In this document: positions 1,900 through 64,000 of the stretch, one piece after another
Layout: each line of letters opens with the position of its first letter
Position numbering within the stretch: position 1 is the stretch's first letter
IMG/VR virus record: IMGVR_UViG_3300025098_000012
Location: 162,699 to 226,698 of that record
Length of the DNA stretch: 64,000 nucleotides
Strand: one strand, 5' to 3'
The notes under the pieces: model-generated
What the model was told of the DNA's origin: nothing
The model's input: only the letters and a program-made list of their open reading frames with translations
The model's database searches: none
Position numbers and translations under genes: made by a program

Positions 1900-2379
1900 T
1901 TAAATAACCTCTATCATCCAACCACGACCTAGACCGCCACCAAAAGATCCACGAGATGTCTGTAAGTAATCTTTGATAGCATACGCTATATCAACATCAC
2001 CCTCAAAGCGATCTTCCAAGTCATGAATACCTGCGTTCATATATATATCATCCATCTCAACGGGATGGCTTGCTTCTACTGCTAATGCAAAGTCAAAAAG
2101 ACTCACATTGCAAGACCAATGGTTATCTGGACAGATAAAGTTGATCTTTGATCTTTCTCCATTAGGGATGATGTTTACAACACATCGACCTGTTGCTTGG
2201 CTTTTGACCATTGAAAGTAGCTCTTGGACTGTCATCCTCTCCACTTCGTTTCTTGGTGATCCTGTAGAGATTGACACCTTGATCTTCGAGCTTGCTGTAC
2301 GATTTGAAGCTGTTTTGGACTCAAGTCGAGCAATCCTTTGCTCAAGGTCTTTGATGATTTCACTAGCAGATCTTCTCAT
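1900..2379 (-). CDS. MRRSASE-leader cassette protein (putative virion-internal cargo)
   Basis: ATG at 2379 after GGAG RBS; leader MRRSASEIIKDLEQRIARLESKTASNRTAS; unrelated C-terminal payload. Confidence 0.8.
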   Translation of the reverse strand: MRRSASEIIKDLEQRIARLESKTASNRTASSKIKVSISTGSPRNEVERMTVQELLSMVKSQATGRCVVNIIPNGERSKINFICPDNHWSCNVSLFDFALAVEASHPVEMDDIYMNAGIHDLEDRFEGDVDIAYAIKDYLQTSRGSFGGGLGRGWMIEVI

Positions 2380-2439
2380 GGTTTTTCTCCATTGGTTTAA
2401 GGTTAAAGAGATCACTTATGAGAGGGTATAAATAAACTA
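2358..2439 (-). repeat. 82-bp promoter-UTR-leader cassette, exact inverted copy of 56387-56468
   Basis: Base-by-base identity between the two loci; diverged copies at 5077-5165, 25199-25241, 42979-43036, 50040-50140 and, coding part only, 52613-52669 and 22925-22979. Confidence 0.95.
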
Positions 2440-9852: not shown

Positions 9853-11292
9853 TTATTTCTGCCCGTAAGTGTTAAGGGATAAGAGTTTAGCTAATCTTAC
9901 AAGACGAAGAGTGTCTTGCTTCGACAGATTTTTACCATTTAAGTAGCTTGCTTGCTCCAGATAATCAACTACATCATTATACTGACTGGTTGAGCCGAGC
10001 AAACTAGCTAACTTATAAACATGGGTAGGAATCTGAACATTACAGTGATTATTCACTAGAGTTATGTTCAGTACAGCTTCTTCAACAGACTTAGCTGTTC
10101 TAACAGAAGCATCTAAGAGGCTCATGTACTTGGAAGCAGACATACCCTCTTTGACAATCGTATCGTTTTGTTCAACGACAGACTTATCAATAGGTGGGTT
10201 CATTACTTCTTGAGCCTTCTCTGCTTTGAGTTCGTTTTCTAGCTTTTGGCGAAAACGATCTACAATAGCAGTCTCGTAAACATTTTCGAGCTGTTTCAAC
10301 AAAGACTCGGAAGGTGCGTCAGCTTTATCATCACCACCTTCATCCTCATCCATGTCAAAAGGTCCAGCTTTCTTGTTTAGCTGACCATGAGGGTCATACC
10401 AAGGAGAACTCTGTAAACTAGACGCTTTAGCAATCCACTTCTGTGGAACTTCATTAAGTTGATCATCAGAAGCTGATTTAGCCATGTCAGCTTTAGGGAT
10501 GTCTAATACATTGCGAGCGACAGCTCCTACAAATGCAGGGGTTGCAACCCAAGATGCTTCGATGAATGTAACACCTGCTGTACCACCGATTTCTTCATGA
10601 CCACAAAGCTCTGCTACTCTATGTTGATTTCCTTGTTCATCATAGAAAACATTGCCTTTCTCATATTTGATATGAGAACACATCTCGGTTTCATCAGCGG
10701 CCACATGACCACATTTGGTGCAAATGGTAAAGTCTACGCTACATCCCATAGACATTGAGTTCATTTGACCCGACTCAATCTGTTTAACCAAGTCTTTGTG
10801 TTTGCGATCAGTAGCGACAAGGATGTCTACATATAAAGAATCACCGATGTCTCTAAGAACAGCATCAATGATCCGACCCTTAGATAGTTCTTCAACTTGG
10901 ATATGCTCAACAAAGTTATGAGCACCAATGAAGGTCTGATAAGATTTCTTAATCACACCTCTTGACCATGAGTCGAGGTTGTTATTGATGAACTTATCAG
11001 TGCCAGAGCTGACACGATAGTCAGCGTATTTACGATTAATAGTTTGTCCACCCTCAGTGATCGAGCCTGTCTTTGTGTTTGGAGGTGTGATTGCATCGAC
11101 AGAGCAAACGATAGTGGAGTGGGTAAGTAGAAATCTATCGGGAGTGAAAGGTTCGCCTAAGATGTCCTCTGCTTGCTTTTTGAGCGAAGCATTGATGGTT
11201 TTAGCACCAGAAGCGATCCTTACCTTATCCCATTGTAGACCATGAATGGAGGGCTGAACTACATTAGCCCTAGCATATCTTAAAAATGCCAT
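9853..11292 (-). CDS. Prohead (capsid maturation) serine protease with Cys/His insertion
   Basis: TFIGAHNFVEH, KGRIIDA, SMSMGC followed by CTKC-x-CSH, FIEASWVATPAF; head-operon position. Confidence 0.7.
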   Translation of the reverse strand: MAFLRYARANVVQPSIHGLQWDKVRIASGAKTINASLKKQAEDILGEPFTPDRFLLTHSTIVCSVDAITPPNTKTGSITEGGQTINRKYADYRVSSGTDKFINNNLDSWSRGVIKKSYQTFIGAHNFVEHIQVEELSKGRIIDAVLRDIGDSLYVDILVATDRKHKDLVKQIESGQMNSMSMGCSVDFTICTKCGHVAADETEMCSHIKYEKGNVFYDEQGNQHRVAELCGHEEIGGTAGVTFIEASWVATPAFVGAVARNVLDIPKADMAKSASDDQLNEVPQKWIAKASSLQSSPWYDPHGQLNKKAGPFDMDEDEGGDDKADAPSESLLKQLENVYETAIVDRFRQKLENELKAEKAQEVMNPPIDKSVVEQNDTIVKEGMSASKYMSLLDASVRTAKSVEEAVLNITLVNNHCNVQIPTHVYKLASLLGSTSQYNDVVDYLEQASYLNGKNLSKQDTLRLVRLAKLLSLNTYGQK

Positions 11293-39753: not shown

Positions 39754-39898
39754 GTTAAACTCCTTTTAGAGATTGGTTAAACGCATATAAACTAGAGTCA
39801 TATAAACAATCTACAAATCCTGTAACCCCTTATCTATGAGATTGTGTGGGAGAGGTATGTAAGCCTTGCCCAAGCCTTACTCCAACAAGGAGATCCAA

Positions 39899-42025
39899 AT
39901 GAGAGTTTTCAAGAACAAGTTCGCCAAAAAGTGTAATGTCTGTAAGACCCCTGTAGCTGAGGGTGCAGGGTTCACATATCAGCCACAGGGTGGAGCGTAC
40001 ACCACCATCTGCAATAGCTCTGTATGTCTTGACGCAAGTCCTGCACAGGTCAAGGCTCTCCTTAACGCACCCTCTGTGCGTGAGATCAATGCACAAGGTG
40101 AGATCAAGATGCCTTATGAGGCAGACGCTTTACCTATCTTGCGTGGGATGCCTGGAGCAAGGTGGAATGGCGATCTCAAGTGTTGGACTGTAAGTCTTGC
40201 ACCGAAGGATCGTCAGCGTGTGATGGAGGGTGTGCGTAGGCTCAACCTCAGCTTCCCTATCGGCTTCGATGGAGTACAGCAAGATAGCTCTGTCTTAGAT
40301 GCTATCAGTCGAGCCAAAGACGGTGGTGCTTACACCTATCAACTTGATGGGGTCAAGTTCCTGTCAAGCCATGAGAACTGCTTGCTTGCAGATGACATGG
40401 GTCTTGGGAAGACCCTACAGGCACTCATGGCTATCGAGATGGGTGGTCGAGCTATCGTACTTTGCCCTGCAACTTTGAAGCTCAATTGGGCAAACGAGGT
40501 TCGCAAGTGGAGGTCTGACCTCTCTCCAGTGGTCTGTAAAGGTCGCAAGGGGTTCAAGCTCCCTCAAGCGAATGAGGTTGTCATCCTCAACTATGAGATC
40601 CTCCCTACAGAGATGACTCCTACTGACAAGTGGGGTGATGACTCTGAGAATGTACCTCAAGCATGGCGAGATGTGCTTGCTCAAACAACCCTTATCGCTG
40701 ACGAGGCTCACCTCTGTAAGAGCCACAAGGCGATCCGTAGCAAGCGTACTAAGGTTCTCTCCAACCTCTGTAAGAGGAGTTGGGCGATGACTGGAACTCC
40801 CCTCTTGAGCAAAGGTTTTGACCTATGGGGTGTAGTCAGCACCTTCGGAATGGGTCGCACCATCTTCGGTGGCTTCAAGGGGTTCATCCGAGACATGAAC
40901 GCTCATCAAAACTACTATGGTGGATGGGAGTTCGGCACACCTAACCCATGTGTACCAGAGAAGCTCCGTAGGGTCATGCTCCGTAGGACTAAGACTGAGG
41001 TCTTGACCAACCTCCCACCTAAGACCTACCAAGATGTACTTGTCGAGGTAGGCTCAAAGCGACTCCTCAAGATGAGTGAGAAGATGCTTGAGGCAATGAA
41101 GGAGAATGGCTCAAACGCTATCCCCGACTTTAGCGAGTTCAGTCGCATCCGAGCCGAGCTTGCCGAGTCTCGTATCTCTGCCCTTGAAGAGATGGTTGAG
41201 AGCTTCGAGGAGGCTAACGAGCCTGTGGTCGTGTTCTCTGCACACCGATCACCAATCGAGGCTATGGCAAAGCGTGATGGTTGGGCTGTAATCATGGGGG
41301 ATACCGACCAAGATGATCGTGAAGATGCTGTTATGGCTTTCCAAGCTGGAATGCTCAAAGGGATCGCCTGTACCATCAAAGCTGGTGGTGTCGGGATCAC
41401 CCTCACCAAAGCAAGCAAGATGATCTTCTGTGATCAAGAGTGGAATCCTGCTCTTAATCTCCAAGCTGAGGATCGTATCTGTCGTATCGGTCAGACTGCT
41501 TCTAACTTGCAGTACATCCGACTCGTATCGGACTGTGCGATGGATCTTCATGTCCTCAAACTCATAGACAAGAAAAAGGCTCTTATCGAGGCATCAATCG
41601 AGAAAGAGTGTGGAGCGTTGACCTCAACTGCTACCACTAAGGGTGTCGCTATCAAGCAAGAGACTCGTGAGGAGCGTGATGCTCGTATCGCTAAAGCTGT
41701 TCAGCGAGACGCTCAAAACGCTGTCTCTAACCAACTTACAGAGTGGACTAAGGCAATCCCATCAAAGATCCTCAATCGTTCTGTAGACGCTAACCTACAA
41801 GCTCAAATCATCACAGCAAGTGAGTCTCTTGACGGTGCTTGTGATGGGGCAACCGATAAGGACGGAATGGGGTTCAACAAACCCGACAGCTATGTGATGA
41901 AGAACATCAACTCAAGTGGTCTACTCCATGACCTCGATCAGCAAGACTTGCTCAAGTTCGCTTGGTCAAAACTCCTCAAGTATCGGGGTCAAGTAGGAAC
42001 TATCGCACCTAGCCTTTACCTATAA
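39899..42025 (+). CDS. SNF2/SMARCAL1-like SF2 helicase
   Basis: LADDMGLGKT, DEAH, TGTP, LRRTK, NLQAEDRICRIGQ; AAGGAG RBS before ATG 39899. Confidence 0.88.
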   Translation: MRVFKNKFAKKCNVCKTPVAEGAGFTYQPQGGAYTTICNSSVCLDASPAQVKALLNAPSVREINAQGEIKMPYEADALPILRGMPGARWNGDLKCWTVSLAPKDRQRVMEGVRRLNLSFPIGFDGVQQDSSVLDAISRAKDGGAYTYQLDGVKFLSSHENCLLADDMGLGKTLQALMAIEMGGRAIVLCPATLKLNWANEVRKWRSDLSPVVCKGRKGFKLPQANEVVILNYEILPTEMTPTDKWGDDSENVPQAWRDVLAQTTLIADEAHLCKSHKAIRSKRTKVLSNLCKRSWAMTGTPLLSKGFDLWGVVSTFGMGRTIFGGFKGFIRDMNAHQNYYGGWEFGTPNPCVPEKLRRVMLRRTKTEVLTNLPPKTYQDVLVEVGSKRLLKMSEKMLEAMKENGSNAIPDFSEFSRIRAELAESRISALEEMVESFEEANEPVVVFSAHRSPIEAMAKRDGWAVIMGDTDQDDREDAVMAFQAGMLKGIACTIKAGGVGITLTKASKMIFCDQEWNPALNLQAEDRICRIGQTASNLQYIRLVSDCAMDLHVLKLIDKKKALIEASIEKECGALTSTATTKGVAIKQETREERDARIAKAVQRDAQNAVSNQLTEWTKAIPSKILNRSVDANLQAQIITASESLDGACDGATDKDGMGFNKPDSYVMKNINSSGLLHDLDQQDLLKFAWSKLLKYRGQVGTIAPSLYL

Positions 42026-51575: not shown

Positions 51576-51860
51576 TTAATGTTGTCTATGCAGACATCTC
51601 GCCCTAACCTCATTGAGCATAGATTCGATCTTATTAAACTTATCTAAAAATTCTTTATAGGGTCGAAGCACATCTTCATCACTGAGGTTATCGAGCATTT
51701 CAGCGGCATCATCAAAGATTCTTTTAAGATCACGATTTTCACTTAGAAAGTCATGGTTTTCATACTTTTTTCTAAGGTCTACGAGCCTACCTAGATTGTC
51801 ATCTAGGTTTTCTCTCACATCGTGAAACATCTTGGTTTTAGAGACTGCGTTTCTTACCAA
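51576..51860 (-). CDS. Hypothetical protein
   Basis: ORF overlapping the upstream stop; start uncertain. Confidence 0.55.
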   Translation of the reverse strand: MVRNAVSKTKMFHDVRENLDDNLGRLVDLRKKYENHDFLSENRDLKRIFDDAAEMLDNLSDEDVLRPYKEFLDKFNKIESMLNEVRARCLHRQH

Positions 51861-53584
51861 CTTTTTTTTTGATAAGAAGCTCTTCTACGACCACCACTCA
51901 TAGCACCCTCAAGTTTACGGATGAGTTTCTGTAGACCTGCAATGGCTTTACGAGTACGAACTTCAACAGGCTGACGACCTGCACGACCAGTTCCTTGAAT
52001 ACGATCAAGTGCGAGGCGAATGTCGTTCGCAGACTCTTGGGAAAGTTGATCTCGATTAGTGCCGAGTGAACGCTGTGTTGCCATGAGCTGTTGTACAGCT
52101 CGCTCATCAACGATACCGTTATCTTGGAATGAAGCAATCGCCGCACGAACAACAGAAACGGTATCTGTGATCATAGCTTGTGAGTAAGCAATGTCTTGGT
52201 TCTGCCACATTCCAGGATTTGAAGTAAGACCGATTGGATACGAGCCATAGAGAGGACCGCTCTTACGGTGTTCACCTCTCTGTGAATATGCAGAGACATA
52301 ACCCTTCTTGAGCTTAGACTTGAGCTGTTTAACAAAGAAAGCCTGTGCTTCATAAGAGTCCATAAATGATTTATCGGCTCTACGACCCGAAGAACCAAGA
52401 CGACCATAAAGGATTTCTACATCTGATCCGCTAACGACCATCTCGTAGAATTTGCTTTTGTTCTCGGACTCACCGATGAGATAAAGCATACAAGAGGTAG
52501 CCTCTGCCATTGAGCGACCCTCATGATAAGCTGTGCTTGAGCGAACACCTGCGAGTTGTGGCTCACCTGCGGCTTCACGATTCATGCTTGCAGTGCGATT
52601 GAGGTTTGCCTCAAGACGAGCGATCCTCATCTCAAGGTTACGGATTACTTCACTAGCTGATCTTCTCATTTGAGATCCTTTCTTTAGAAGCCTTCTGACT
52701 TCATCTTTAGAGTAAGAGTTGTCGAGCTTACGCTCATTACGATAGATGAGGTGACGCAAACGCTTACGCTCCTCATCATTGAGTGAATCAATGCCTCTAC
52801 GCTGACCTTTATTGATAAGCATAAAGTCATCACGCTCAAGATAGGCATTGGATTTAAGGTCTGCAAGTAGCTTAGATGCTGGAGATGACTGACTAGCAAT
52901 GATTTCTTCAACCACATTCATCTGTCTTTCAGAGAGCTGAATACGATCTTCAGCTTTAGACTTGAGTTGTGCCAAGAAACGATTACGAGGGTCGAGTTCA
53001 AGTGCCTTTTCAATACGGACAAGCTGATTACTTGTCTGATTACCAACCATTTGAGTTTGCATCAGTTTTTCGTCAAGCACTTCAATCTGTCTCTCGGAAA
53101 GCTCTCTACCACCCATAAACTGATCGTAGAGACTTCTGAAAAAACGATTAGTAGGTTGCATCGCAATCGCTTGGTTGAGCTTCGTTAAGATGTCTTGATC
53201 GGGATTCTCAATACGCTCTTCAGTTTCGATTAGGATTTCCTCAACCCTGTAGTGAAGGGGATCTCCTTGTTGAAGCTCATTTAAGATGTCTTTCCACCAA
53301 TCACTATTCGGATTAAGAGCAAGAACTGCTTGAACACGCTCAATGCTCTCTACATCTCTGAACTTACCTGGAAAGTCGATCTTGAGTTGGATGAGTCCAT
53401 CACTGATGGACATATCTCCAAGACTCCTTAACAGAGACACAAGAACATCTGGTCCTTTTTTGTTGAGTTTAACTTCAAAATCGTCAAAGTTAATCATGGC
53501 ATTGTCTCTACGAGACTCCATCTCAAGCATCTCTAGTGCTTCTTCTACTGTGGTATTGTAGAAATATATTTGATTGGCTTTCAT
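51854..53584 (-). CDS. Multidomain late protein: helical repeats + internal MRRSASE leader + WGR domain
   Basis: LSERQ repeats; MRRSASEVIRNLEMRIARLE; SKFYEMVVSGSDVEILYGRLGSSG...QLKSKLKKGY; late motif at 53623. Confidence 0.75.
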   Translation of the reverse strand: MKANQIYFYNTTVEEALEMLEMESRRDNAMINFDDFEVKLNKKGPDVLVSLLRSLGDMSISDGLIQLKIDFPGKFRDVESIERVQAVLALNPNSDWWKDILNELQQGDPLHYRVEEILIETEERIENPDQDILTKLNQAIAMQPTNRFFRSLYDQFMGGRELSERQIEVLDEKLMQTQMVGNQTSNQLVRIEKALELDPRNRFLAQLKSKAEDRIQLSERQMNVVEEIIASQSSPASKLLADLKSNAYLERDDFMLINKGQRRGIDSLNDEERKRLRHLIYRNERKLDNSYSKDEVRRLLKKGSQMRRSASEVIRNLEMRIARLEANLNRTASMNREAAGEPQLAGVRSSTAYHEGRSMAEATSCMLYLIGESENKSKFYEMVVSGSDVEILYGRLGSSGRRADKSFMDSYEAQAFFVKQLKSKLKKGYVSAYSQRGEHRKSGPLYGSYPIGLTSNPGMWQNQDIAYSQAMITDTVSVVRAAIASFQDNGIVDERAVQQLMATQRSLGTNRDQLSQESANDIRLALDRIQGTGRAGRQPVEVRTRKAIAGLQKLIRKLEGAMSGGRRRASYQKKSW

Positions 53585-53649
53585 CACATCTCCTTCGGTT
53601 TGTTTCACAGCAAAGGAGGAGGTATAAATAAACTATAAAAGGTAAAGAT

Positions 53650-54483: not shown

Positions 54484-54750
54484 ATGTCATTACCTAGAGA
54501 ACGAAAAAGAGCTGACTATCGAGTCATTGCTCGCATCTTGCAACTGAGTCATGGACAAGCAGATCCAAAAGACTCATTGCTTGAAAAGATTTCTAATGTA
54601 TTTAATCGTAATGGTGGCTCTTGGGTATTATTCTTTGAAGGACACCCAAAACACAGCAAGCTACTTAAAGTAGTGATAAAAGCTGTCGTAAAACATAAGA
54701 AGGATCAACATGAGCGAAGAACTAGAAGCCAAATCAGTTGGGAAGATTAA
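54484..54750 (+). CDS. Late hypothetical protein
   Basis: Late motif at 54438; GGGGG RBS. Confidence 0.6.
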   Translation: MSLPRERKRADYRVIARILQLSHGQADPKDSLLEKISNVFNRNGGSWVLFFEGHPKHSKLLKVVIKAVVKHKKDQHERRTRSQISWED

Positions 54751-56386
54751 ACCCCGATCAAAAGCGATCACTCGTAAGCTCAATCCTGCCGAGATGAAAT
54801 CGAGGGTCAAAGTGGCGATGACCACAGGAGGCTCTATGATGGGGTCGGGTGGGAACTTCTACTCACCAGAGTTATCTACTGACTTTCTTGAACTACCTCA
54901 AAGTCAAGACGAACAACGCAACTACTTTAGGTTCTTTTATCGCACTGACCCCTTCGTAGGACAGGCGATTGATCTACATACAGAGCTTCCCCTCTCTAAG
55001 ATCAGATTAGGGCTACCTAAAGCTCGCAACCGAGACATGGCTTATGAAGCACTTAGGTTCTGTGAAAAATGGGCGAAGCGAGTCGGACTACTTCACCGAC
55101 TCATAGAAATCTTACATGAGTTCAACCTGCTCGGTGAGGTTTTTGTTTTCTGTGAGGACAATAATCCAGATGTGCCTCAAGAGGTGACACATAGTGGTCG
55201 GAATGTTCTTAAAGAAGATGGCGAAGCGTTTACTGAGTGGACTGAGTATGAGGACTCCCATGAACGAGCTTACAAGTGGCTCAAGAGGAACTATAAAGGG
55301 TGGACAGGTGTTCGTATCCTCCCTCCCGAACAAGTTCACATGGAGAGTTTTCCTTTCACTAGTGAGAAGATCATTCAACTTATTCCCGATAGTAAAACTC
55401 GTGATGTAGTTGAACGAGCTTCGGTTAATGATCCCTCTGCTCTTCGTATTGTAGACTCAATGCCAGGAGATGTTGTAGAAGCTATTCGAGATGGTCGCAA
55501 CATTGACCTCAATACTGATCCCGATCAAGGATCATTCGTTTATTATATGGCTCGTAAGAAATCACAATATGAACCTCGTGGACACTCTATGCTTGAGCGT
55601 TGTCTTCGTATCCTCGTTTATCGAGATAAATTAAGACAAGCCCAAACTTCTATCGCTTCAAGACACATGACTCCTATCCGACTCGTATATGCAGAGGATA
55701 TGGATGCGTCTGATGTTGAAGAGTTGAGAGATCAAGTGGATCTTGCACTACAAGATCCAGACTATTCTATCATCGCTAACTTCCAAGTCTCTTGGGAAGA
55801 GATGGGTGCTGACTCTCGTTTGCTTGAACTATCGGGCGAATATGATATGACAGACCGACAGATGTATGCAGGTCTAGGTGTTACAGAATCTCTGTTATCT
55901 GGTGAGTCTAGTTATAGTGGCGATAGGATCAACTTAGAAGTCATCAACACACGCTATATGCTTATGCGTGAGGTTCTTCAAGAGATGGTTGAAGAGAACA
56001 TCTTGAAGCCAATGTGTAGACGAATGGGTTTCGTTGAAATAGATGAAGATGGTGATGAGGTTGTAGTACACCCAACCCTTAGCTTCACTCGACTTGGATT
56101 GCGTGATAATCAAGATACCTTTGACGCTCTCTTTAACCTGTATCAGAAGGGTTCATTGGACATTGATGTGATCCTAGAACTCCTCAATGTAGATCCTATG
56201 ACAACTAAGGCTAAACTTGAGCGTGATATGTGGACACTCAATGACTCTCAGTTTAACGAAGTTCTGAGAGGGGTCTATGGTGAAGCAGGTCGTATGTTAG
56301 CCGAGAACACAGAAGCGATTGAGATCATCGCTAAGAATCTTGGATTAAAGTACAACCCACCAGAAGATGACGGTGGTCGTTTCTAA
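54710..56386 (+). CDS. Portal protein
   Basis: 558 aa; FFYRTDPFVGQAIDLHTELPLS, EFNLLGEVF, GHSMLERC, QAQTSIA, GVTESLLSGE are typical of large-phage portals. Confidence 0.75.
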   Translation: MSEELEAKSVGKIKPRSKAITRKLNPAEMKSRVKVAMTTGGSMMGSGGNFYSPELSTDFLELPQSQDEQRNYFRFFYRTDPFVGQAIDLHTELPLSKIRLGLPKARNRDMAYEALRFCEKWAKRVGLLHRLIEILHEFNLLGEVFVFCEDNNPDVPQEVTHSGRNVLKEDGEAFTEWTEYEDSHERAYKWLKRNYKGWTGVRILPPEQVHMESFPFTSEKIIQLIPDSKTRDVVERASVNDPSALRIVDSMPGDVVEAIRDGRNIDLNTDPDQGSFVYYMARKKSQYEPRGHSMLERCLRILVYRDKLRQAQTSIASRHMTPIRLVYAEDMDASDVEELRDQVDLALQDPDYSIIANFQVSWEEMGADSRLLELSGEYDMTDRQMYAGLGVTESLLSGESSYSGDRINLEVINTRYMLMREVLQEMVEENILKPMCRRMGFVEIDEDGDEVVVHPTLSFTRLGLRDNQDTFDALFNLYQKGSLDIDVILELLNVDPMTTKAKLERDMWTLNDSQFNEVLRGVYGEAGRMLAENTEAIEIIAKNLGLKYNPPEDDGGRF

Positions 56387-56446
56387 TAGTTTATTTATAC
56401 CCTCTCATAAGTGATCTCTTTAACCTTAAACCAATGGAGAAAAACC

Positions 56447-56740
56447 ATGAGAAGATCTGCTAGTGAAACTATTAGAAATCTTGAAGATCGTATCGCTCGC
56501 CTTGAAGGTAAGACAGCGAAAATCAACCTCAAATCCCTTGCCAAGCACATAAGTAAAAAAAGAAGCGATGGTACTGGTACTGTTGGCTTTGTGGAATATG
56601 ACGCACGAAGCCAAACAGTAATTTTCCTCAATGGGGACTATGAAGATATAGTAGTACCTGTAGACAAGTTGTTAGCTCAACTTATCCGAGAGGAGATGGG
56701 TAATGACCTGTATGACTTAGAGGGCAACACTATCAGTTAA
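56447..56740 (+). CDS. MRRSASE-leader cassette protein (plus strand; track strand label is wrong)
   Basis: ATGAGAAGATCTGCTAGT at 56447 reads MRRSAS on the + strand, ending TAA at 56738-56740. Confidence 0.85.
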   Translation: MRRSASETIRNLEDRIARLEGKTAKINLKSLAKHISKKRSDGTGTVGFVEYDARSQTVIFLNGDYEDIVVPVDKLLAQLIREEMGNDLYDLEGNTIS

Positions 56741-58519: not shown

Positions 58520-60382
58520 ATGCAGAATATAACTAGTAGAATAAGACCACCAAGAGCAGTAGTCGAACAGATCGAAGAATACCTATTAAGCCAAGTCGGG
58601 GTATACGAAACCCTTAATCTAAATGTTAATGTTCCCCCACCTCCAAGAACTCGTGGTTATGTAGAGGACTTAGACTTGAGAGTGGAGATAATTCCTCCTC
58701 ATGCGTCTGAAAAATATAATAGAGTTGAAGCTAAATATGACTCTACGAACTCTGTTCTTTATGTGAACCTCCCCTACTTTGAAAAAAAATATGAGGGAAG
58801 GGAACTAGCAGAAGCTCTTTACAGAGTAGTCGCTCACGAGCTAGTTCATGTATATCAAATCCTTTATACTAGATCACGAGATGGCGATCCGAGATCTGAC
58901 TCTCCAACAGCAGGGCTTCCTGGACTTAGAGAGAGAACCCCACAATATAGACAGGAAACAGGTGAGATACTTGACCATCGTTTAGACGACAATGAGTTTT
59001 ACCCACGCTTAGAGGACACCATCAATGCAATCAACTTTGTAGCGAGAACAAGGCAAGATGAGATAGCGAGTATCATTTCTTATGTTGTAGGTGAGTCAAA
59101 ACGACCAGCGTACCGTTCTAAGCACTTAAGAGAGCCTATGGCATGGCTTGAAGACTTAGGGAAGTACGCACCTAAAAAGTTCCTCAAAGCTGTGAGAAAG
59201 ATCAAGAACGAGTTCCCCGAAACAGCAAAAATGCGTACTGCCGATTTCTTTAGGCAGGTTAGTCCTCCCGATGAGTTAAGTACCTTTAGTAATGGAACAC
59301 CCACAGGTAAAGGAACAGACCTTAAAGACAAAGGTGAAGGCTCTCAAATGCCAAATGGAGATGGAGCTAGGAATATAGGTCGCCCTAGCCCCGACTCCCC
59401 TAACCTTAAATCAAGAAATCTTGATCGCTCTGAGTCTTATGGTCGTAAGCCTGCTGAGGGATTTGATGGAGGTTATGTGCATGATAGTGGTAGCGGTAGT
59501 GCTAGGGTTATCCCTTATGATAGTGGTTTTGCGAACAACTCATCTCCTTTGAGAAAAGCGTCAAAGCGTGTTGCTCACAGATACTTAGATTCATTAAAAG
59601 CACCTTCGATGAAGACATCGGCAAGACCGATACGCATTGATAAAGCTAAGATCAAAGAGATGACTAAGGATGCGATCAAAACCCTTGAGGACATAGTTAA
59701 GAAAACTAAGGAGGAAACCTTATCCAAAGCTATCAAACGCAAGACGAGAGACGGAACTATATTTCTAGGTAGCTACCTAGATTCTGGTTCCTCTATTGAG
59801 ATTCAGATCATGGTCAAAGAAACGCACGAAAATGGGCAGTACATCTACAATCCACAAAGGGGTTTGCATGAGATCGAAATCTATCTTGCAGATAGAACCG
59901 TCAAAGAACTGACTCACCCTTATCTGTATAAAATGTCAATAAGACCAGCGATGGTTAAGCACATATACTCTATTCTCATACATGAGATTACTCATGCCGT
60001 TGAGCGAATCCGATACTTGCAGACTGACGAGGACTTGCTAGGCTTTGGTTTAAATCAAGGATCTAGGTTTGATAAGGCAAAGATCAAGACACGCAAAGAC
60101 AAAGATAAGGTATTAAAGGCGTATTACAATGACCCTAGCGAGGTTAAGGCTTACCTCCAACAGATTGCTGATGAAGTAGAGGAATACCTTAACCAAAAGC
60201 ATGGAGGGCTGTCTAAAGAATCCCTACAGTCTGGTTGGAGAGATTCTTTTGGTTATTACGGTTCTAAGACTTGGGATCAAGTTTCTAAATACCTCACCCC
60301 AAAGAACCAAAAGTATATCAAGAAAGCAGTGCTCTCACATCTCATAGAGACCATAGACTCAAAGGAATCAACCAATGGCTAA
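58520..60382 (+). CDS. Polyprotein-like late protein with two HExxH metallopeptidase-like modules
   Basis: AHELVHVYQ...DDNEFY and IHEITHAVE...DPSEVKAY; RTAD, RKAS, RVAHRYL, KTSA boundaries; late motif at 58476. Confidence 0.75.
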   Translation: MQNITSRIRPPRAVVEQIEEYLLSQVGVYETLNLNVNVPPPPRTRGYVEDLDLRVEIIPPHASEKYNRVEAKYDSTNSVLYVNLPYFEKKYEGRELAEALYRVVAHELVHVYQILYTRSRDGDPRSDSPTAGLPGLRERTPQYRQETGEILDHRLDDNEFYPRLEDTINAINFVARTRQDEIASIISYVVGESKRPAYRSKHLREPMAWLEDLGKYAPKKFLKAVRKIKNEFPETAKMRTADFFRQVSPPDELSTFSNGTPTGKGTDLKDKGEGSQMPNGDGARNIGRPSPDSPNLKSRNLDRSESYGRKPAEGFDGGYVHDSGSGSARVIPYDSGFANNSSPLRKASKRVAHRYLDSLKAPSMKTSARPIRIDKAKIKEMTKDAIKTLEDIVKKTKEETLSKAIKRKTRDGTIFLGSYLDSGSSIEIQIMVKETHENGQYIYNPQRGLHEIEIYLADRTVKELTHPYLYKMSIRPAMVKHIYSILIHEITHAVERIRYLQTDEDLLGFGLNQGSRFDKAKIKTRKDKDKVLKAYYNDPSEVKAYLQQIADEVEEYLNQKHGGLSKESLQSGWRDSFGYYGSKTWDQVSKYLTPKNQKYIKKAVLSHLIETIDSKESTNG

Positions 60383-62336
60383 AAATGTACCTACCGATGA
60401 GAAGTTATGGACTGAGATACAATCTCTAGCTAAAGGTGAGTCTAGTAAGCCTGTTTCTAGGGGTAAAGAGTCTGTCAATCCTGTGAATGATGGGAAAGGG
60501 TTTGAAACTTTCCCATCGGCTTATGCTAACGGTTGGGCTTTGGCTCAGTACAAGCGACTAGGTGGTAAGTGGAAAAAGGAATCTAAAAAAGCAGGTCTGA
60601 TAAGACCTCCAAAACATATTGTAGATAAAGTTTCAGAGATACTGACGGCAGGGTTTGCTTCTTATTGGGTTGGGAAGCAAAAGGAAATGGATAATAAACC
60701 GTATTTATCTATATCTCTTGAAAAGATCTCTAACTTTGAAAACCTTATCGAAGATTTAGATGAAGCGTATATGTCCGTAAGGATGAAACGAGCTACTTTT
60801 GATGAATTGGAAAGAGCTTTAAGAGCTTTGAGAGTATCGACTCAAGAGCTTATAGATATGTTTAAAGGGCGAATACCTCCTACCCTTGAAAAGATGAGTC
60901 ATATTTTAGAAAACATGAGTCCGATTAGTGTCTTTGAAGAACCTAAAAAATATAAAAAAGAATTTATGTTTTTAGGTAGGACATTCGGTTTAATTTCAGA
61001 GTTGAGATCTCTGAGACAAGATCCTGTTTCTTACATCTCAGAGAAATCAAGGGCATTATATGAGGGTGAAGCTAATAAAGTTAAAAGGTTTGATAAATTC
61101 TTAGATCGACCTTCTCAATCGACATGGATTTTTCAAACAGAAGATTTAGGCACACTTCGGTTACAAGTAAGAGAATCTAAGGGTGCTAAGGGTTTAGCGT
61201 ATTATCGTTATGATGAAATTGATGATCTACATACAATAACCGTTAGGGTGTTTCCTAACTCCAATGACTTGAGTGGGGAAGATCTAGGTAAGATTAAAGA
61301 TTATGTACGGCATGAGTTAGTTCATGCTATGCAAAAAAAAATGTCATTGGACTTCAATGTTGATCAAGCAGGTATTCCTTTCCAAAAGCGAGATATGACT
61401 TACTTGCAAGGACATAAATACAAAGAAAAAGACCTTAAAGCTCAATATGAAAGAGAGGGTCTTGACTCAGATTTGGTAAGTATCCATGCACTTGATGACA
61501 TCGAGTTTTATACGAGACTTTTAGATGAAGTGGTGGAATTTCAGAGACTTAATGTGAGTGGTTCAGACCTTAATCAAGAGGTGCATGAGTGGGTGTCCAA
61601 AAGAAAATTTTTTGTAAGTTTAAAAAGGTTTAAGAAAAAGAATTGGAACAAGGCTGTTGGTATTTTCTTTGAAGCAGTCAGTTCTAATCGAAAGTATGCT
61701 CGTAAGTGGGACAAAGATCATTGTGAGTCTAAGAGTTGCGATGAGATGGGCTTCTCTGAAAAGGCTTCATGTCGCCCCTATAAGAACTGCTACGAGAAGT
61801 CAGCGTCCTCCAAAGTTAAACCCATGTACTTAGGTTCAGAAAGTGGAGCGATGGCTTACGATTTCTACTTTATGCGTGTGGAAAAGGATTACTATTACCA
61901 CTACACATACAGAGATCGTGCCGAAGAAATAATAGAGGATGGTTATTTAAGACCCAATTTCTACAACGATCAACCAGGAGGACAAGGTGTTTTTGCCATC
62001 TCTGGATCTTATGGACAAGAGGTCACAGACCTTCAAGTCAGTGGTTCTAGGAAAAAACACATGGATAGGATAGTTGCCCTCAAGTTTAAGACTAAAACTG
62101 AGCCTAAGTATGGATACCCCGAAGAAATCATTTGGGATAAACCTGTGAAACTTATTCGACCAGAGATTGTTAGCTTTTCGGAAGCTGAGGCAGACATTAA
62201 GAGGAATGAGGACTTAGGAGAATACTTCAAGGTATTTTACGACTTTAAGAAGGCTGTCGAGATTAAAAAAGAATATGGAACAGTGATCTCTAGGGTTGCT
62301 CACAGATACTTAAGGAATCTAAAAAATGAAACATAA
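60375..62336 (+). CDS. Polyprotein-like protein: small basic module, HExxH module, Cys module, ART-like module
   Basis: FPSAYANGW; RHELVHAMQ...DDIEFY; WDKDHC...MGFSEKASC; YHYTY...IIEDGYLRP; terminal RVAHRYL. Confidence 0.75.
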   Translation: MAKNVPTDEKLWTEIQSLAKGESSKPVSRGKESVNPVNDGKGFETFPSAYANGWALAQYKRLGGKWKKESKKAGLIRPPKHIVDKVSEILTAGFASYWVGKQKEMDNKPYLSISLEKISNFENLIEDLDEAYMSVRMKRATFDELERALRALRVSTQELIDMFKGRIPPTLEKMSHILENMSPISVFEEPKKYKKEFMFLGRTFGLISELRSLRQDPVSYISEKSRALYEGEANKVKRFDKFLDRPSQSTWIFQTEDLGTLRLQVRESKGAKGLAYYRYDEIDDLHTITVRVFPNSNDLSGEDLGKIKDYVRHELVHAMQKKMSLDFNVDQAGIPFQKRDMTYLQGHKYKEKDLKAQYEREGLDSDLVSIHALDDIEFYTRLLDEVVEFQRLNVSGSDLNQEVHEWVSKRKFFVSLKRFKKKNWNKAVGIFFEAVSSNRKYARKWDKDHCESKSCDEMGFSEKASCRPYKNCYEKSASSKVKPMYLGSESGAMAYDFYFMRVEKDYYYHYTYRDRAEEIIEDGYLRPNFYNDQPGGQGVFAISGSYGQEVTDLQVSGSRKKHMDRIVALKFKTKTEPKYGYPEEIIWDKPVKLIRPEIVSFSEAEADIKRNEDLGEYFKVFYDFKKAVEIKKEYGTVISRVAHRYLRNLKNET

Positions 62337-64000
62337 GTCTTTAATCGAAAAGGTGGCCCAACGCTATTTAGAGTCTGTAAAGCGTGATGATCCTAAAAAA
62401 AAGAACACTGGTAAGGGTGGGTTAGGTACTTGGTTTGCAGGGCATGGTGGTGGAGATCCCGATGATCGTGCTACATGGGGCGATTGGATTGCTATAACAC
62501 CTGTAAAACACACTATCAAAAAAGAAGATGGAGAGGACAAGACCTATGAACCAGGAGACATTGTTGGCCCATGTGCCATATCTAGTGAAAAAGAGTGGTC
62601 AGATGTTACAAGTGGGGGAAAAAAACCCCTCAAGTGTATGCCACGAGAAAAAGCATGGAAAATGCCCAAGAAAGACCGAGCCGAGATTGCCAAAAAGAAA
62701 AGGCGGGAAGAAGCGAAGCATCGTGGGAAGAAGCCTGTTAATACTCCGACTTTCTCTGATGAAGCTAAAGAGATCACAGAGAAAAAGAAGAAGACTTCTG
62801 GCTTAATCAGACCTCCAAAACACATTGTAGATCAAGTAGCAGAAATAGGTAAAGGATTACTCGCCCAATACTGGATTAAAAGGGAAAAAGAGGATAGCTC
62901 CAAAGGTGGACTAGATCCAGAGTCTGTTGAGGGTCTTGAGTGGATACTTGAGGATCTTGATTATCTGCCACTTGGGGTCAAAAGAGGTGAACATGATGAG
63001 GAAGAAGTGATCTTCCAAGTCAGAAATGTACAGAGAGCTTTTTCCGAGATAGATGAACAGATGGAATCTGCAAACCTCAAATACTCAGACTTCCACAAAA
63101 TCAAGACAAAGATAGATCAGCTCGATGCACAGAGCATCTTTAATGACCCAAGAGGGAATAAGGCTCTCATCGGGTCTATCTCGGATAGGGCATCTGATTT
63201 ACTTCGTGAGTTTAAAAAATGGTCAACAGGGAGTAAACAATACATCCCCACCTTAATGCGTAATGACTACCTTGAAGCTGTCGAACGACTGTCAAAGTAC
63301 AAGGTCAAGGACAGTGGTAGATACTATGTTGAAGATGATGAGCTAGGCTTAGTGGCAGTACATCTTCAAGAGTCCTCACATGGTGCGGCTCAATACTATT
63401 GGGATGGTATTCACCACATCATATTTAATGTTCTCAAGAATATGACTGAACTCCCTCTCAAGTATTTAACAGATCGAGAAACGATAGCAGGACATGAGCT
63501 AGTTCATGCAATGCAACAACATTACGCTAATAAAGCGAACATAGAGGAAGCAGGATTACCAAGTCAGAAAAGAGATGAACAGTTTCGTTTTGACATGAAG
63601 GAGAAACAGAAAGAGCTGAGAGTCCAATATGCTAGAGAGGGGATGGATTTTGAGCTGATCTCTATCCATGCGTTAGATGACATAGAGTTTTACTCTCGCC
63701 TACTCGATGAGGTTACTGAGTTCAAAAGACGCAATAAGGGTCTTAATGATGAAATACATAAATGGGTAAAAAAACGACCTTTTTTTGTAAGTCTTAAGAG
63801 ATTTAAGCGTAGGAATTGGAAAAAAGCAGTAGGCATCTTTGTTGATGCTGTGCAACTTAAAGCTAAGTCAGCTAGTCGGGTAGCTCATCTCTATTTGCAA
63901 GCGGCTGCTCAACCTGCACAAGACCTAGCAGGTGTCAAAACATGGGTCGATAAAACCCGACAAGACCAAATCAATAACGATACCTCTACCCCAAATAAAT
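62326..64000 (+). CDS. Partial polyprotein-like protein with HExxH module (runs off the window)
   Basis: Hand translation MKHKSLIEKVAQRYL...KKTSGLIRPPKHIVD...GHELVHAMQ...HALDDIEFYSRLLDEV...KSASRVAHLYL; not in the track. Confidence 0.8.
   Translation, partial: MKHKSLIEKVAQRYLESVKRDDPKKKNTGKGGLGTWFAGHGGGDPDDRATWGDWIAITPVKHTIKKEDGEDKTYEPGDIVGPCAISSEKEWSDVTSGGKKPLKCMPREKAWKMPKKDRAEIAKKKRREEAKHRGKKPVNTPTFSDEAKEITEKKKKTSGLIRPPKHIVDQVAEIGKGLLAQYWIKREKEDSSKGGLDPESVEGLEWILEDLDYLPLGVKRGEHDEEEVIFQVRNVQRAFSEIDEQMESANLKYSDFHKIKTKIDQLDAQSIFNDPRGNKALIGSISDRASDLLREFKKWSTGSKQYIPTLMRNDYLEAVERLSKYKVKDSGRYYVEDDELGLVAVHLQESSHGAAQYYWDGIHHIIFNVLKNMTELPLKYLTDRETIAGHELVHAMQQHYANKANIEEAGLPSQKRDEQFRFDMKEKQKELRVQYAREGMDFELISIHALDDIEFYSRLLDEVTEFKRRNKGLNDEIHKWVKKRPFFVSLKRFKRRNWKKAVGIFVDAVQLKAKSASRVAHLYLQAAAQPAQDLAGVKTWVDKTRQDQINNDTSTPNK

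What the first reader, a model, noticed from the sequence alone, without database searches (positions are those of the whole stretch)
61800..62290. ADP-ribosyltransferase-like module released after a KSAS site
Seen: YYHYTYRDRAEEIIEDGYLRP...GQGVFAIS...YPEEIIW. Established: ART folds show a YHxT...I...G-L/F-xP strand, a G-G-V-Y/F strand and a catalytic Glu, and T4 injects the ART Alt. Inference: an injected ART acting on host protein or nucleic acid.
Basis: inference. Interest (0 to 1): 0.6.

Follow-up and report, generated by a model that had tools for sequence, protein, structure and literature searches.

The report
Uncatalogued ART-fold module, huge-phage polyvalent protein
The C-terminal part of a 653-residue multi-domain protein, encoded just downstream of the portal gene of a roughly 345-kb uncultured phage, folds like an ADP-ribosyltransferase and belongs to a sizeable family absent from the standard domain libraries; this fits the known idea that big phages carry host-modifying enzymes in multi-domain virion proteins, but its activity, target and delivery are untested.

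Summary
The quoted motifs lie in frame in ORF 60375-62336 (+), 653 aa, at residues 507-527, 536-543 and 581-587, just after a KSAS linker (475-478).

A whole-library HMMER search found 229 cluster representatives of this about 130-residue domain. They occur alone (130-200 aa) or inside proteins of up to about 2000 aa that also carry Topo IB, ART-PolyVal, cREC, 2H and other domains. Pfam, PHROGs and NCBIfam have no model for the family.

With a 136-sequence alignment, AlphaFold2 gives pLDDT 92.4. All 50 rows shown of an exhaustive structural search are ART-superfamily proteins (TreTu Z 6.1, CC0527 5.3, Tpt1 about 5), though the Z values are modest. His509, Ser543 and Glu584 are 99-100% conserved and sit on the strands expected to form an ART NAD+ pocket.

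The gene belongs to a portal-adjacent cluster of HExxH-containing multi-domain proteins. In relatives whose portals are 88-98% identical, the modules of this cluster are reshuffled.

Release at KSAS and injection into the host remain unproven inferences. KSAS is not enriched. A different motif, (S/K)R-VAHRYL, marks the module and gene junctions.

Verdict: a new family-level member of a known kind, the ART domains of phage polyvalent proteins.

The parts
60375..62336 (+). Whole gene for P0001, 653 aa. It is a multi-domain protein in this order: DUF5872-like N-terminus, HExxH domain, Cys-rich mini-module, ART-fold module, SRVAHRYL tail.
   Evidence: An identical protein is found on a 345-kb contig.
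60375..60584 (+). N-terminal module (residues 1-70) with the FPSAYANGWALAQYKRLGG motif. It is weakly DUF5872-like and shuffles independently in relatives.
   Evidence: Pfam DUF5872 E 0.016, below its cut-off. The module is fused directly to the ART module in P0005, P0006 and P0008.
60588..61700 (+). Central HExxH domain (residues 72-442). HELVH lies at 61311-61325 and H-x-L-D-D-x-E-F-Y at 61485-61511. It is a candidate zincin-like metallopeptidase by motif only. Paralogous copies occur in both neighbouring genes.
   Evidence: Invariant H286, H313, E314, H317 and H371-LDD-EFY across 30 diverse homologues. No Pfam or PDB sequence match. Only weak Atlas leads to LPD23 and M78/M3 peptidases.
61701..61796 (+). 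Cys-rich mini-module (residues 443-474, K-W-D-K-D-H-C-E-S-K-S-C...C-R-P-Y-K-N-C-Y). It has four Cys and one His and may bind metal. It is a mobile module.
   Evidence: Found before the ART module in P0001 and P0007, after it in P0008 and at the N-terminus in P0012. No Pfam match.
61797..61808 (+). KSAS linker (residues 475-478) at the N-terminal boundary of the ART-fold module.
   Evidence: It is a boundary in all close relatives (K[AS][AS]S followed by K-V/G-K/R-P). It is not enriched genome-wide.
61830..62249 (+). Core of the ART-fold domain (residues 486-625). Candidate NAD+-pocket residues: His509 (61899-61901), Ser543 (62001-62003), Tyr546-Gly547, Glu583-Glu584 (62121-62126) and Trp587.
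   Evidence: HMMER family. Conservation. AF2 pLDDT 92.4. ART-only structural matches.
62289..62312 (+). SRVAHRYL junction motif (residues 639-646) at the C-terminus of P0001. Further copies are at 59570-59587 (P0002), 62353-62370 and 63880-63897 (P0003).
   Evidence: The motif occurs in the genome only in these three proteins. In relatives, genes are split or fused exactly at it.
58520..60382 (+). Upstream neighbour P0002 (620 aa). It has two HExxH modules separated by a VAHRYL motif and belongs to the same cluster.
   Evidence: Weak SprT, M91 and BSP peptidase signals at the HExxH.
62326..63999 (+). Downstream neighbour P0003. It starts with a VAQRYL motif and contains an HExxH domain paralogous to that of P0001. 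It is cut by the end of the contig; the full length is 775 aa.
   Evidence: 100% identical over 558 aa to the 775-aa P0184.
54710..56386 (+). Portal protein gene, 2.1 kb upstream of the cluster. Given as context for the virion association.
   Evidence: phrog_16240 portal, E 8e-32. tblastn matches annotated portals of Tunturiibacter phage Tunturi_5 and Bacillus phage G.
9853..11292 (-). Candidate head-maturation protease. Given as context; it is a possible alternative processing enzyme.
   Evidence: phrog_18299 head maturation protease, E 1.8e-15.

Best explanation
Residues about 486-625 of the 653-aa protein P0001 form a divergent domain of the ADP-ribosyltransferase (ART) superfamily. The domain belongs to a family of at least 229 sequence clusters that Pfam, PHROGs and NCBIfam do not model.

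[quoted passage not shown] The candidate pocket residues are:
- the invariant His509 on the first core strand;
- the invariant Ser543 at the end of the next core strand, followed by Tyr/Trp546-Gly547;
- Glu583-Glu584 at the start of the later strand.

A nucleic-acid or translation-related target is slightly favoured over a protein target, but the target is unknown.

The module is one cassette of a cluster of three or more multi-domain 'polyvalent-type' proteins encoded downstream of the portal gene of a huge phage of about 345 kb. These proteins also carry HExxH (zincin-like) domains. The most likely scenario is packaging in the head and delivery with the DNA, as for T4 Alt and as proposed for polyvalent proteins. 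The modules would then act either as parts of the whole protein or after processing at the inter-module linkers.

Shown: the gene, the family, its conservation pattern, the ART-like predicted fold, the module shuffling and the portal-adjacent position.

Inferred: NAD+ use, transferase activity, the target, packaging, injection and any proteolytic release.
For: Fold:
- AF2 on a 136-sequence alignment gives pLDDT 92.4 and pTM 0.87.
- In an exhaustive VIA-align search of 48,161 chains, all 50 rows shown are ART-superfamily folds: TreTu Z 5.5, KptA/Tpt1 4.8, CC0527 4.7, then diphtheria toxin, DarT, Tne2, PltA, PARP13, pertussis toxin, Arr, RES toxins and others.
- The second look gives TreTu Z 6.1 (rmsd 2.9, 84 aligned), CC0527 5.3 and Tpt1 about 5.0 at 16-19% identity.
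- Foldseek's weak list is also dominated by ARTs.
- The ESM Atlas shape search finds a Tox-ART-HYD1 cluster.

Sequence:
- The only ART-type Pfam signal is Tox-ART-HYD1, aligned from the YHYT strand (E 0.14; another member E 0.0045).
- The language-model neighbours that carry a family name are DarT/PARP, HYD1 and Arr.

Conservation and topology:
- His509 and Ser543 are 100% conserved, Glu584 99% and Glu583 89%, in a family with 23% mean column identity.
- They sit on strand 22-27, which is followed by a helix, at the end of strand 54-58, and just before strand 100-102 of the model. This is the beta1/beta2/beta5 layout described for ART triads (PMC9825190).

Context:
- Among 47 longer homologues the domain shares polypeptides with Topo IB (9), ART-PolyVal (6), cREC (4), 2H (3), DUF3990 (3), PolyA_pol and HAD_SAK_1, in variable order.
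- A stand-alone member lies next to an ART-PolyVal-like gene and a NUDIX gene.
- A 1975-aa member lies in a block with a weak Phage_capsid_4 match about 5 kb downstream.
- In this phage the cluster follows the portal gene.
- The cluster is reshuffled between relatives whose portals are 88-98% identical, as expected for fast-evolving conflict effectors.

Literature: ARTs are among the commonest enzymatic domains of virion-embedded polyvalent proteins, which typically carry a zincin-like peptidase (PMC5512222; PMC9503650).
Against: - Structural Z-scores are modest (at most 6.1). The tool warns that Z under 8 may reflect only a common arrangement.
- No sequence-profile match to any ART reaches significance. 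The Pfam hit is below its cut-off, the PDB profile search found nothing, and hhalign against two ART-PolyVal sequences gave nothing.
- No residue-level superposition was available, so placing His509, Ser543 and Glu584 in an NAD+ pocket rests on secondary-structure order.
- The His-Ser-Glu combination fits none of the canonical H-Y-[EDQ], R-[ST]-E or H-H-h triads.
- No Macro, NADAR, Tpt1 or ART-PolyVal partner was found in the 227-kb fragment, which is 73% complete.
- There are no proteomic or expression data for packaging or cleavage.
- The HExxH domain has no detectable peptidase homology beyond its motif.
Confidence: 0.55

Rival explanations
1. The domain is a Tpt1/KptA-like NAD+-dependent enzyme that acts on nucleic-acid ends, by 2'-phosphate removal or ADP-ribose capping of 5'-phosphates. 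Its role would be RNA repair or countering host RNA-damaging defences, not toxin-like modification of a host protein.
For: - Tpt1/KptA C-terminal domains are among the best structural matches and have the highest identity (Z 4.4-5.1, 16-19%).
- The domain co-occurs in polyvalent proteins with 2H phosphoesterase, cREC (cyclic-phosphate processing), a PolyA_pol head domain and HAD_SAK_1 RNA-repair domains.
- PMC9503650 links phage 2H domains with KptA in tRNA repair.
Against: - The Tpt1 Pfam model (PF01885) finds nothing in this genome, although it is found in control genomes.
- The module lacks the N-terminal lobe of Tpt1.
- The family has Ser and Glu where the Tpt1/CC0527 clade has His and a hydrophobic residue (triads as summarised in PMC9825190).
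- Topo IB and ART-PolyVal are more frequent partners than RNA-repair domains.
Confidence: 0.15
2. The domain is an NAD+-consuming hydrolase or phosphorylase (like Tne2, RES, MbcT or TNT), or a mere NAD+/ADP-ribose binder, and does not transfer ADP-ribose to a macromolecule.
For: Tne2 (Z 4.0), the RES-type toxins VPA0770 and Xre-RES, and MbcT appear in the same structural list. Small ART-fold domains of 110-160 aa are often NADases.
Against: - These matches score lower than TreTu, Tpt1 and CC0527.
- Draining NAD+ early in infection would hurt a phage with a long replication programme. This is an inference.
- A conserved Glu-Glu at the beta5 position is typical of transferases.
Confidence: 0.1
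3. The ART-like fold is catalytically inert here, like TASOR pseudo-PARP or protein 6b. It would serve as a structural or binding module of an internal head or ejection protein.
For: - Pseudo-ARTs appear in the hit list (TASOR, PARP13, 6b).
- The triad is non-canonical.
- The module is embedded in proteins that may be mainly structural.
Against: - His, Ser, Gly, Phe, Glu, Trp and Tyr positions are invariant in a family with 23% mean identity.
- The domain also occurs as a stand-alone 130-170-aa protein.

Both features are typical of an enzyme.
Confidence: 0.1
4. The ART-fold enzyme is real but is not packaged or injected. It would be made and act inside the infected cell, as T4 ModA and ModB do. 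The portal-adjacent position would be incidental.
For: - There is no direct evidence of packaging.
- Between the portal gene and the cluster lie opposite-strand genes, including a DnaG-type zinc-ribbon protein, so the cluster is not in one operon with the portal.
- The gene after the portal in the cultured relative Tunturi_5 is unrelated.
Against: - The multi-domain architecture with HExxH modules matches published virion-delivered polyvalent proteins (PMC5512222).
- The position after the portal gene is conserved in all long relatives.
- A distant polyvalent homologue lies in a block with a weak capsid-family match downstream.
Confidence: 0.3

Closest known systems
ART domains of phage and plasmid polyvalent proteins (ART-PolyVal, PF18760; Iyer et al. 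2017, PMC5512222)
   Same: An ART-fold module embedded in multi-domain proteins of phages, together with an HExxH domain, next to virion genes. It shuffles freely with other effector domains.
   Different: The Pfam ART-PolyVal model does not match this domain. In 6 of 47 long homologues ART-PolyVal is present as a separate second domain in the same protein. hhalign against two ART-PolyVal segments found nothing. This is therefore a distinct family.
Tox-ART-HYD1 (PF15633; for example Photorhabdus Tre23, which ADP-ribosylates 23S rRNA according to PMC9825190)
   Same: It is the only Pfam family with any signal. The alignment starts at the His-bearing first strand and its following helix. It is also the Atlas structural neighbour and a language-model neighbour.
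   Different: The score is 13.3 bits against a cut-off of 25. The Tyr position is variable and the acidic residue is Glu-Glu, so the H-Y-D signature is not met.
Salmonella Rhs toxin TreTu (PDB 7ZHM/7ZHL)
   Same: It is the best structural match (Z 6.1, rmsd 2.9 over 84 residues). It is a minimal ART fold of about 113 aa with an unorthodox, hybrid catalytic set (PMC9825190).
   Different: Sequence identity is 2-5%. TreTu uses Arg on beta1 and His/Trp later, whereas this family has His, Ser and Glu. TreTu is a T6SS-delivered bacterial toxin with an immunity protein.
tRNA 2'-phosphotransferase Tpt1/KptA and CC0527 (DUF952)
   Same: The structural similarity is comparable (Z 4.4-5.3), with the highest identity (16-19%) over the NAD+-binding lobe. 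There is a His on beta1.
   Different: There is no Tpt1 N-terminal lobe and no Pfam match. The family has Ser and Glu at the positions where the H-H-h clade has His and a hydrophobic residue.
Phage T4 Alt (head-packaged, injected ART)
   Different: By general knowledge Alt belongs to the Arg-Ser-Glu type; this was not compared here. The present domain has His on the first strand. Packaging is not shown here, and no Alt-like sequence match was seen.

Membership tests
ART superfamily (fold level) | Split beta-sheet ART core that matches solved ART structures | tested here: met
   The AF2 model has pLDDT 92.4. All 50 rows shown of an exhaustive search are ART-superfamily folds, with best Z 5.5-6.1. 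The Z values are modest, so this is fold-level support and not proof of homology.
ART superfamily (fold level) | Conserved NAD+-contacting residue (His or Arg) on strand beta1 | tested here: met
   His509 is conserved in 136/136 sequences. It lies on model strand 22-27, which is followed by a helix. The sub-threshold Tox-ART-HYD1 alignment begins on this strand. Its position in a pocket is inferred, because no residue-level superposition was available.
ART superfamily (fold level) | Catalytic acidic residue at the start of strand beta5 | tested here: inconclusive
   Glu584 (135/136) and Glu583 (121/136) immediately precede model strand 100-102. This is consistent with the feature, but equivalence to the catalytic Glu was not verified in 3D.
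ART superfamily (fold level) | NAD+-dependent ADP-ribosyl transfer or NAD+ turnover | not testable with these tools
   This needs biochemistry.
Tox-ART-HYD1 (PF15633) | Score above the Pfam gathering threshold (25 bits) | tested here: not met
   13.3 bits, E 0.14, covering only profile positions 2-35 of 97. Only 1 of 136 relatives reaches E 0.0045.
Tox-ART-HYD1 (PF15633) | His-Tyr-Asp signature | tested here: not met
   His is present. The expected Tyr column is variable (F45, Y23, Q15, N14 of 136). The acidic position is Glu.
ART-PolyVal (PF18760) | Match to the family model | tested here: not met
   There is no hit for P0001/P0004, for 136 relatives or in the genome. Note that the control genomes for one search also did not ring. 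ART-PolyVal occurs as a separate domain in some homologues.
Tpt1/KptA (PF01885) | Match to the family model and two-lobed architecture | tested here: not met
   There is no match in the genome, while 4 control genomes ring. Structural similarity is limited to the C-terminal lobe.
Polyvalent proteins (Iyer et al. 2017) | Several unrelated, freely recombining domains in one polypeptide of a phage or mobile element | tested here: met
   P0001 has at least four modules. The same modules are recombined in different orders and genes in relatives. Distant homologues of up to 1975 aa combine the domain with Topo IB, ART-PolyVal, cREC and 2H.
Polyvalent proteins (Iyer et al. 2017) | Zincin-like metallopeptidase (MPTase) hub domain | tested here: inconclusive
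   HExxH plus a downstream H-x-L-D-D-x-E-F-Y is invariant in 30 homologues. No Pfam or PDB profile match was found. There are only weak Atlas leads to LPD23 and M78/M3 peptidases.
Polyvalent proteins (Iyer et al. 2017) | Packaged in the virion and delivered into the host | not testable with these tools
   Only context is available: the cluster lies 2.1 kb downstream of the portal gene in this phage and in all long relatives.

The most novel reading that the evidence does not exclude
The family is a previously undescribed clade of the ART superfamily with a hybrid His-Ser-Glu active site: the His of the H-Y-E/H-H-h clades combined with the Ser and Glu of the R-S-E clade. On this reading it modifies host nucleic acid or the translation apparatus on entry.

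The lineage-specific (S/K)R-VAHRYL junction peptide would be the recognition element by which the embedded HExxH domains, or the head protease, cut the polyvalent proteins into separate effectors. That would make this cluster a self-processing, cassette-swapping effector array.
Probability: 0.15. Interest if true: 0.65.

Novelty: new member of a known kind. Interest (0 to 1): 0.42.

Why it matters
ART domains carried in phage polyvalent proteins are predicted to be a main way for large phages to reprogramme or disarm the host in the first moments of infection, yet very few have been characterised.

This work defines a sizeable ART-fold family: at least 229 clusters at 50% identity, occurring alone and inside proteins of up to about 2000 aa. 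Pfam, PHROGs and NCBIfam lack this family, so it is invisible to routine annotation. The report provides a confident model and three candidate catalytic residues to mutate.

The portal-adjacent cluster also gives a clear natural example of cassette shuffling at a defined junction motif between nearly identical phages. This could be used to study how such effector arrays evolve and are processed.

If the odd His-Ser-Glu set is catalytic, it would add to the growing list of unorthodox ART active sites such as TreTu.

Tried and rejected
- **Shallow AF2 model.** AF2 with only 5 close homologues gave an unusable model (pLDDT 45.9). It was replaced by the model built on 136 sequences.
- **PDB sequence-profile searches.** The ART module gave only chance hits: Grb14 SH2 at E 0.9 and a lectin at E 0.4. 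The SH2 resemblance of the YYHY...RDRAEE segment was considered and rejected, because no SH2 appears in any fold search.
- **hhalign against ART-PolyVal.** Comparing the family profile with the ART-PolyVal segments of P0085 and P0064 gave no meaningful alignment. Single-sequence templates are weak, and I could not obtain alignments of HYD1, DarT or Tpt1 for a proper profile-profile test.
- **Deposited phage genomes.** blastn and tblastn against 50,697 deposited phage genomes gave no match for the region or for two family members.
- **Word-index search.** The search with the family profile returned only 7 proteins and no names. Cluster look-ups gave only 'hypothetical protein'.
- **The search for related loci.** The close alignment worked.
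- **Circular join.** I joined the contig ends to complete the last ORF. This is invalid, because the record is a linear fragment that is 73% complete. The true product is 775 aa.
- **KSAS as a cleavage motif.** There are 4 exact copies in 64,127 residues of long ORFs and 17 copies of the relaxed pattern, with no significant enrichment.
- **Tunturi_5 gp8.** This 'minor tail protein', encoded after that phage's portal gene, shows no similarity to P0001-P0003.
- **HExxH domain.** No Pfam or PDB homology was found. The PDB hits were only coiled-coil noise.
- **NAD/ADP-ribose partners.** No Macro, NADAR, Tpt1 or ART-PolyVal was found in the fragment.
Full report
**1. The observation**

The window is the last 64 kb of a 226,698-bp IMG/VR virus record. 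The record is linear, so it is probably a fragment, and CheckV rates it 73% complete. The same phage is assembled elsewhere on a 345,452-bp contig.

The genome encodes ribonucleotide reductase, several helicases, a head-maturation-protease candidate and a portal protein at window 54710-56386. The portal's nearest deposited relatives are an uncultured 485-kb phage (71% identity), Tunturiibacter phage Tunturi_5 (37%) and Bacillus phage G (26%). This is a huge phage with no known host. Some relatives of the protein's central domain come from Tara Oceans samples.

The finding lies in ORF 60375-62336 (+), which encodes the 653-aa protein P0001. All quoted motifs are present in frame:
- KSAS at residues 475-478.
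- YYHYTYRDRAEEIIEDGYLRP at residues 507-527.
- GQGVFAIS at residues 536-543.
- YPEEIIW at residues 581-587.

**2. The family**

Pfam gave only a sub-threshold hit of the module to Tox-ART-HYD1 (E 0.14, 13.3 bits). That alignment runs from the YHYT strand onward. PHROGs and NCBIfam gave nothing.

The word-index search found four close metagenomic homologues. Because the family scans left the protein open, I used the whole-library HMMER search. It found 229 cluster representatives at E<=1e-3 and 156 at E<=1e-10. The common core corresponds to residues about 496-625.

About half of the listed members are stand-alone proteins of 130-220 aa. The rest are embedded in proteins of up to 1975 aa, plus one of 7300 aa. 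Of 136 members scanned individually, none matched a PHROG. Essentially none matched Pfam; one weak HYD1 hit was the only ART-type signal. tblastn of two members against 50,697 deposited phage genomes found nothing. The family is therefore real and sizeable, but not catalogued in these libraries.

**3. The fold**

A 5-sequence alignment gave a useless model (pLDDT 45.9). The 136-sequence alignment A3 gave pLDDT 92.4 and pTM 0.87.

Foldseek against the PDB found nothing below E 0.15, but its list is dominated by CC0527, DarT, Tpt1, cholera and LT toxins, Tne2, tankyrase and pertussis toxin.

The exhaustive VIA-align search of 48,161 chains found 71 chains at Z>=2. Every one of the 50 rows shown is an ART-superfamily fold:
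- TreTu, Z 5.5
- KptA, Z 4.8
- CC0527, Z 4.7
- yeast and mouse Tpt1
- diphtheria toxin, DarT, Tne2, TreX, protein 6b, PltA, PARP13, CopC, pertussis S1, Scabin, RES toxins, pierisin, Arr, MbcT, ParT and others

The second look raised TreTu to Z 6.1 (rmsd 2.9, 84 residues). It gave CC0527 Z 5.3 and Tpt1 Z about 5.0 at 16-19% identity.

The tool warns that Z below 8 can reflect a common arrangement. What carries weight is that the list is exclusively ART and that independent leads agree:
- The language-model neighbours that carry a family name are DarT/PARP, HYD1 and Arr.
- The ESM Atlas shape search finds a Tox-ART-HYD1 cluster.
- The Pfam HYD1 signal points the same way.

I conclude that the module has an ART-superfamily fold, with confidence about 0.85.

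**4. Candidate active site**

The family has 23% mean column identity. Within it, the invariant or nearly invariant positions are:
- Asp505
- His509 (136/136)
- Thr511
- Ser543 (136/136)
- Tyr/Trp546 and Gly547 (136/136)
- Phe571 (136/136)
- Thr573, Pro577 and Gly580
- Glu583 (121/136) and Glu584 (135/136)
- Trp587
- Tyr622

In the model:
- His509 lies on strand 22-27, which is followed by a helix.
- Ser543 ends strand 54-58.
- The Glu-Glu pair immediately precedes strand 100-102.

ART triads are located on beta1, beta2 and beta5 (summarised in PMC9825190), and this order fits that layout.

The combination His / Ser / Glu fits none of the H-Y-[EDQ], R-[ST]-E or H-H-h clades. I could not obtain a residue-level superposition, so the pocket assignment is an inference.

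**5. Architecture and context**

P0001 consists of these parts, in order:
- a DUF5872-like N-terminal module (residues 1-70; Pfam E 0.016);
- an HExxH domain (residues 72-442);
- a Cys-rich mini-module (residues 443-474);
- the KSAS linker;
- the ART-fold module;
- a C-terminal SRVAHRYL motif.

The neighbours P0002 (58520-60382) and P0003 (62326 to the end of the contig; 775 aa in full) carry paralogous HExxH domains and the same VAHRYL motif.

Across 30 diverse homologues the HExxH domain keeps HExxH and a downstream H-x-L-D-D-x-E-F-Y invariant. No peptidase homology could be shown. There are only weak Atlas leads to LPD23 and to M78/M3 peptidases.

Twelve IMG/VR loci and one ENA contig carry the same locus downstream of a portal that is 88-98% identical. 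In them the ART module sits in different fusions:
- with only the N-terminal module (254 aa);
- inside the P0002-like protein (784 aa);
- fused to the P0003 N-terminus (514 aa);
- and in other arrangements.

Genes are split or fused exactly at the (S/K)R-VAHRYL motif. That motif occurs in the genome only in these three proteins.

Distant homologues combine the domain, in variable order, with these partners:
- Topo IB (9 of 47)
- ART-PolyVal (6)
- cREC (4)
- 2H (3)
- DUF3990 (3)
- PolyA_pol
- HAD_SAK_1

A stand-alone member is translationally coupled to an ART-PolyVal-like gene next to a NUDIX gene. A 1975-aa member lies in a block with a weak Phage_capsid_4 match about 5 kb downstream.

This is the published picture of 'polyvalent proteins': virion-associated multi-domain effectors in which ART and a zincin-like peptidase are hub domains (PMC5512222; PMC9503650).

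**6. Mechanism and its limits**

The most likely reading is an NAD+-dependent ADP-ribosyltransferase cassette in a portal-adjacent polyvalent protein, probably delivered at infection. The target is unknown. Two observations tilt slightly towards a nucleic-acid or translation-related target:
- The nearest families (HYD1/Tre23, DarT, Tpt1) act on nucleic acids.
- The co-occurring domains are nucleic-acid enzymes.

'Released after KSAS' cannot be evaluated. KSAS marks a true module boundary, but it is not enriched and there is no cleavage evidence. The module may equally act within the intact protein. Where the gene is split in relatives, it is made as a separate protein anyway.

Packaging and injection are inferences from context. 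No Macro, NADAR, Tpt1 or ART-PolyVal partner was found in the fragment.

**7. Comparison, novelty and score**

The module works like the ART domains of polyvalent proteins and is functionally analogous to T4 Alt. It fails the membership tests for ART-PolyVal, Tox-ART-HYD1 and Tpt1. It is best filed as a new family within the ART superfamily, that is, a new member of a known kind.

ARTs occur in over 40% of jumbo phages (PMC9503650), so finding one here is not surprising. The added value is threefold:
- the uncatalogued family;
- the unusual conserved residue set;
- the clean example of cassette shuffling at a junction motif.

Interest: 0.42.

No reads tools were used.

Noticed in passing
window 59570-59587, 62295-62312, 62353-62370, 63880-63897: A short peptide motif, (S/K)R-V-A-H/Q-R/L-Y-L, marks module junctions in P0002, P0001 and P0003 and occurs nowhere else in the 227-kb record. 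In relatives, neighbouring genes are split or fused exactly at this motif. For example, P0001 ends with it and P0003 starts with it, while P0011 has the two parts fused through a single copy. Two copies share 18 identical bases; the others differ at synonymous sites. It may be a processing or docking signal, or a recombination joint.
   Followed up: partly
window 58520-63999, compared with L001 and L005-L016: Relatives whose portals are 88-98% identical carry the same set of modules (DUF5872-like, HExxH, Cys-rich, ART-fold, basic N-terminal region) in different gene arrangements. This indicates rapid cassette shuffling in the portal-adjacent cluster.
   Followed up: partly
window 51854-53608 (-): A 584-aa protein carries a WGR domain (Pfam E 7e-13), the domain known from PARP enzymes. 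No recognisable catalytic domain was found. It is conserved (80-83% identity) upstream of the portal gene in all long relatives.
   Followed up: no
window 1900-2415 (-), window 51854-53608 (-), and genome 152943-153707 (outside the window): Three ORFs share a near-identical peptide, M-R-R-S-A-S-E-I/V-I-R/K-N/D-L-E. The small ORF at 56411-56740 also shares a segment with the WGR protein. This looks like a repeated short module of unknown role.
   Followed up: no
window 61701-61796: A Cys-rich mini-module of about 32 residues, with four Cys and one His, moves independently among relatives: before or after the ART module, or at a protein's N-terminus. It has no Pfam match and may be a small metal-binding knuckle.
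   Followed up: partly
window 8246-9814 (-): A 522-aa protein with EF-hand calcium-binding motifs (Pfam E 1.7e-9) is encoded next to the head-maturation-protease candidate (9853-11292). EF-hands are unusual in a phage head-gene neighbourhood.
   Followed up: no
window 40001-42000: There is a local G+C peak (50.6% against about 42% for the window) within the helicase gene 39866-42025 (phrog_62). It may be a recently acquired segment or a compositionally distinct domain.
   Followed up: no
window 62326-63999 and L023:12321-22328: The last ORF is cut by the contig end. On the 345-kb assembly it is 775 aa long. It is followed by a DUF5856/ferritin-like protein, several small ORFs and a protein of over 2300 aa. 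The central HExxH domain family is also found fused to DUF5856 in many metagenomic proteins.
   Followed up: partly
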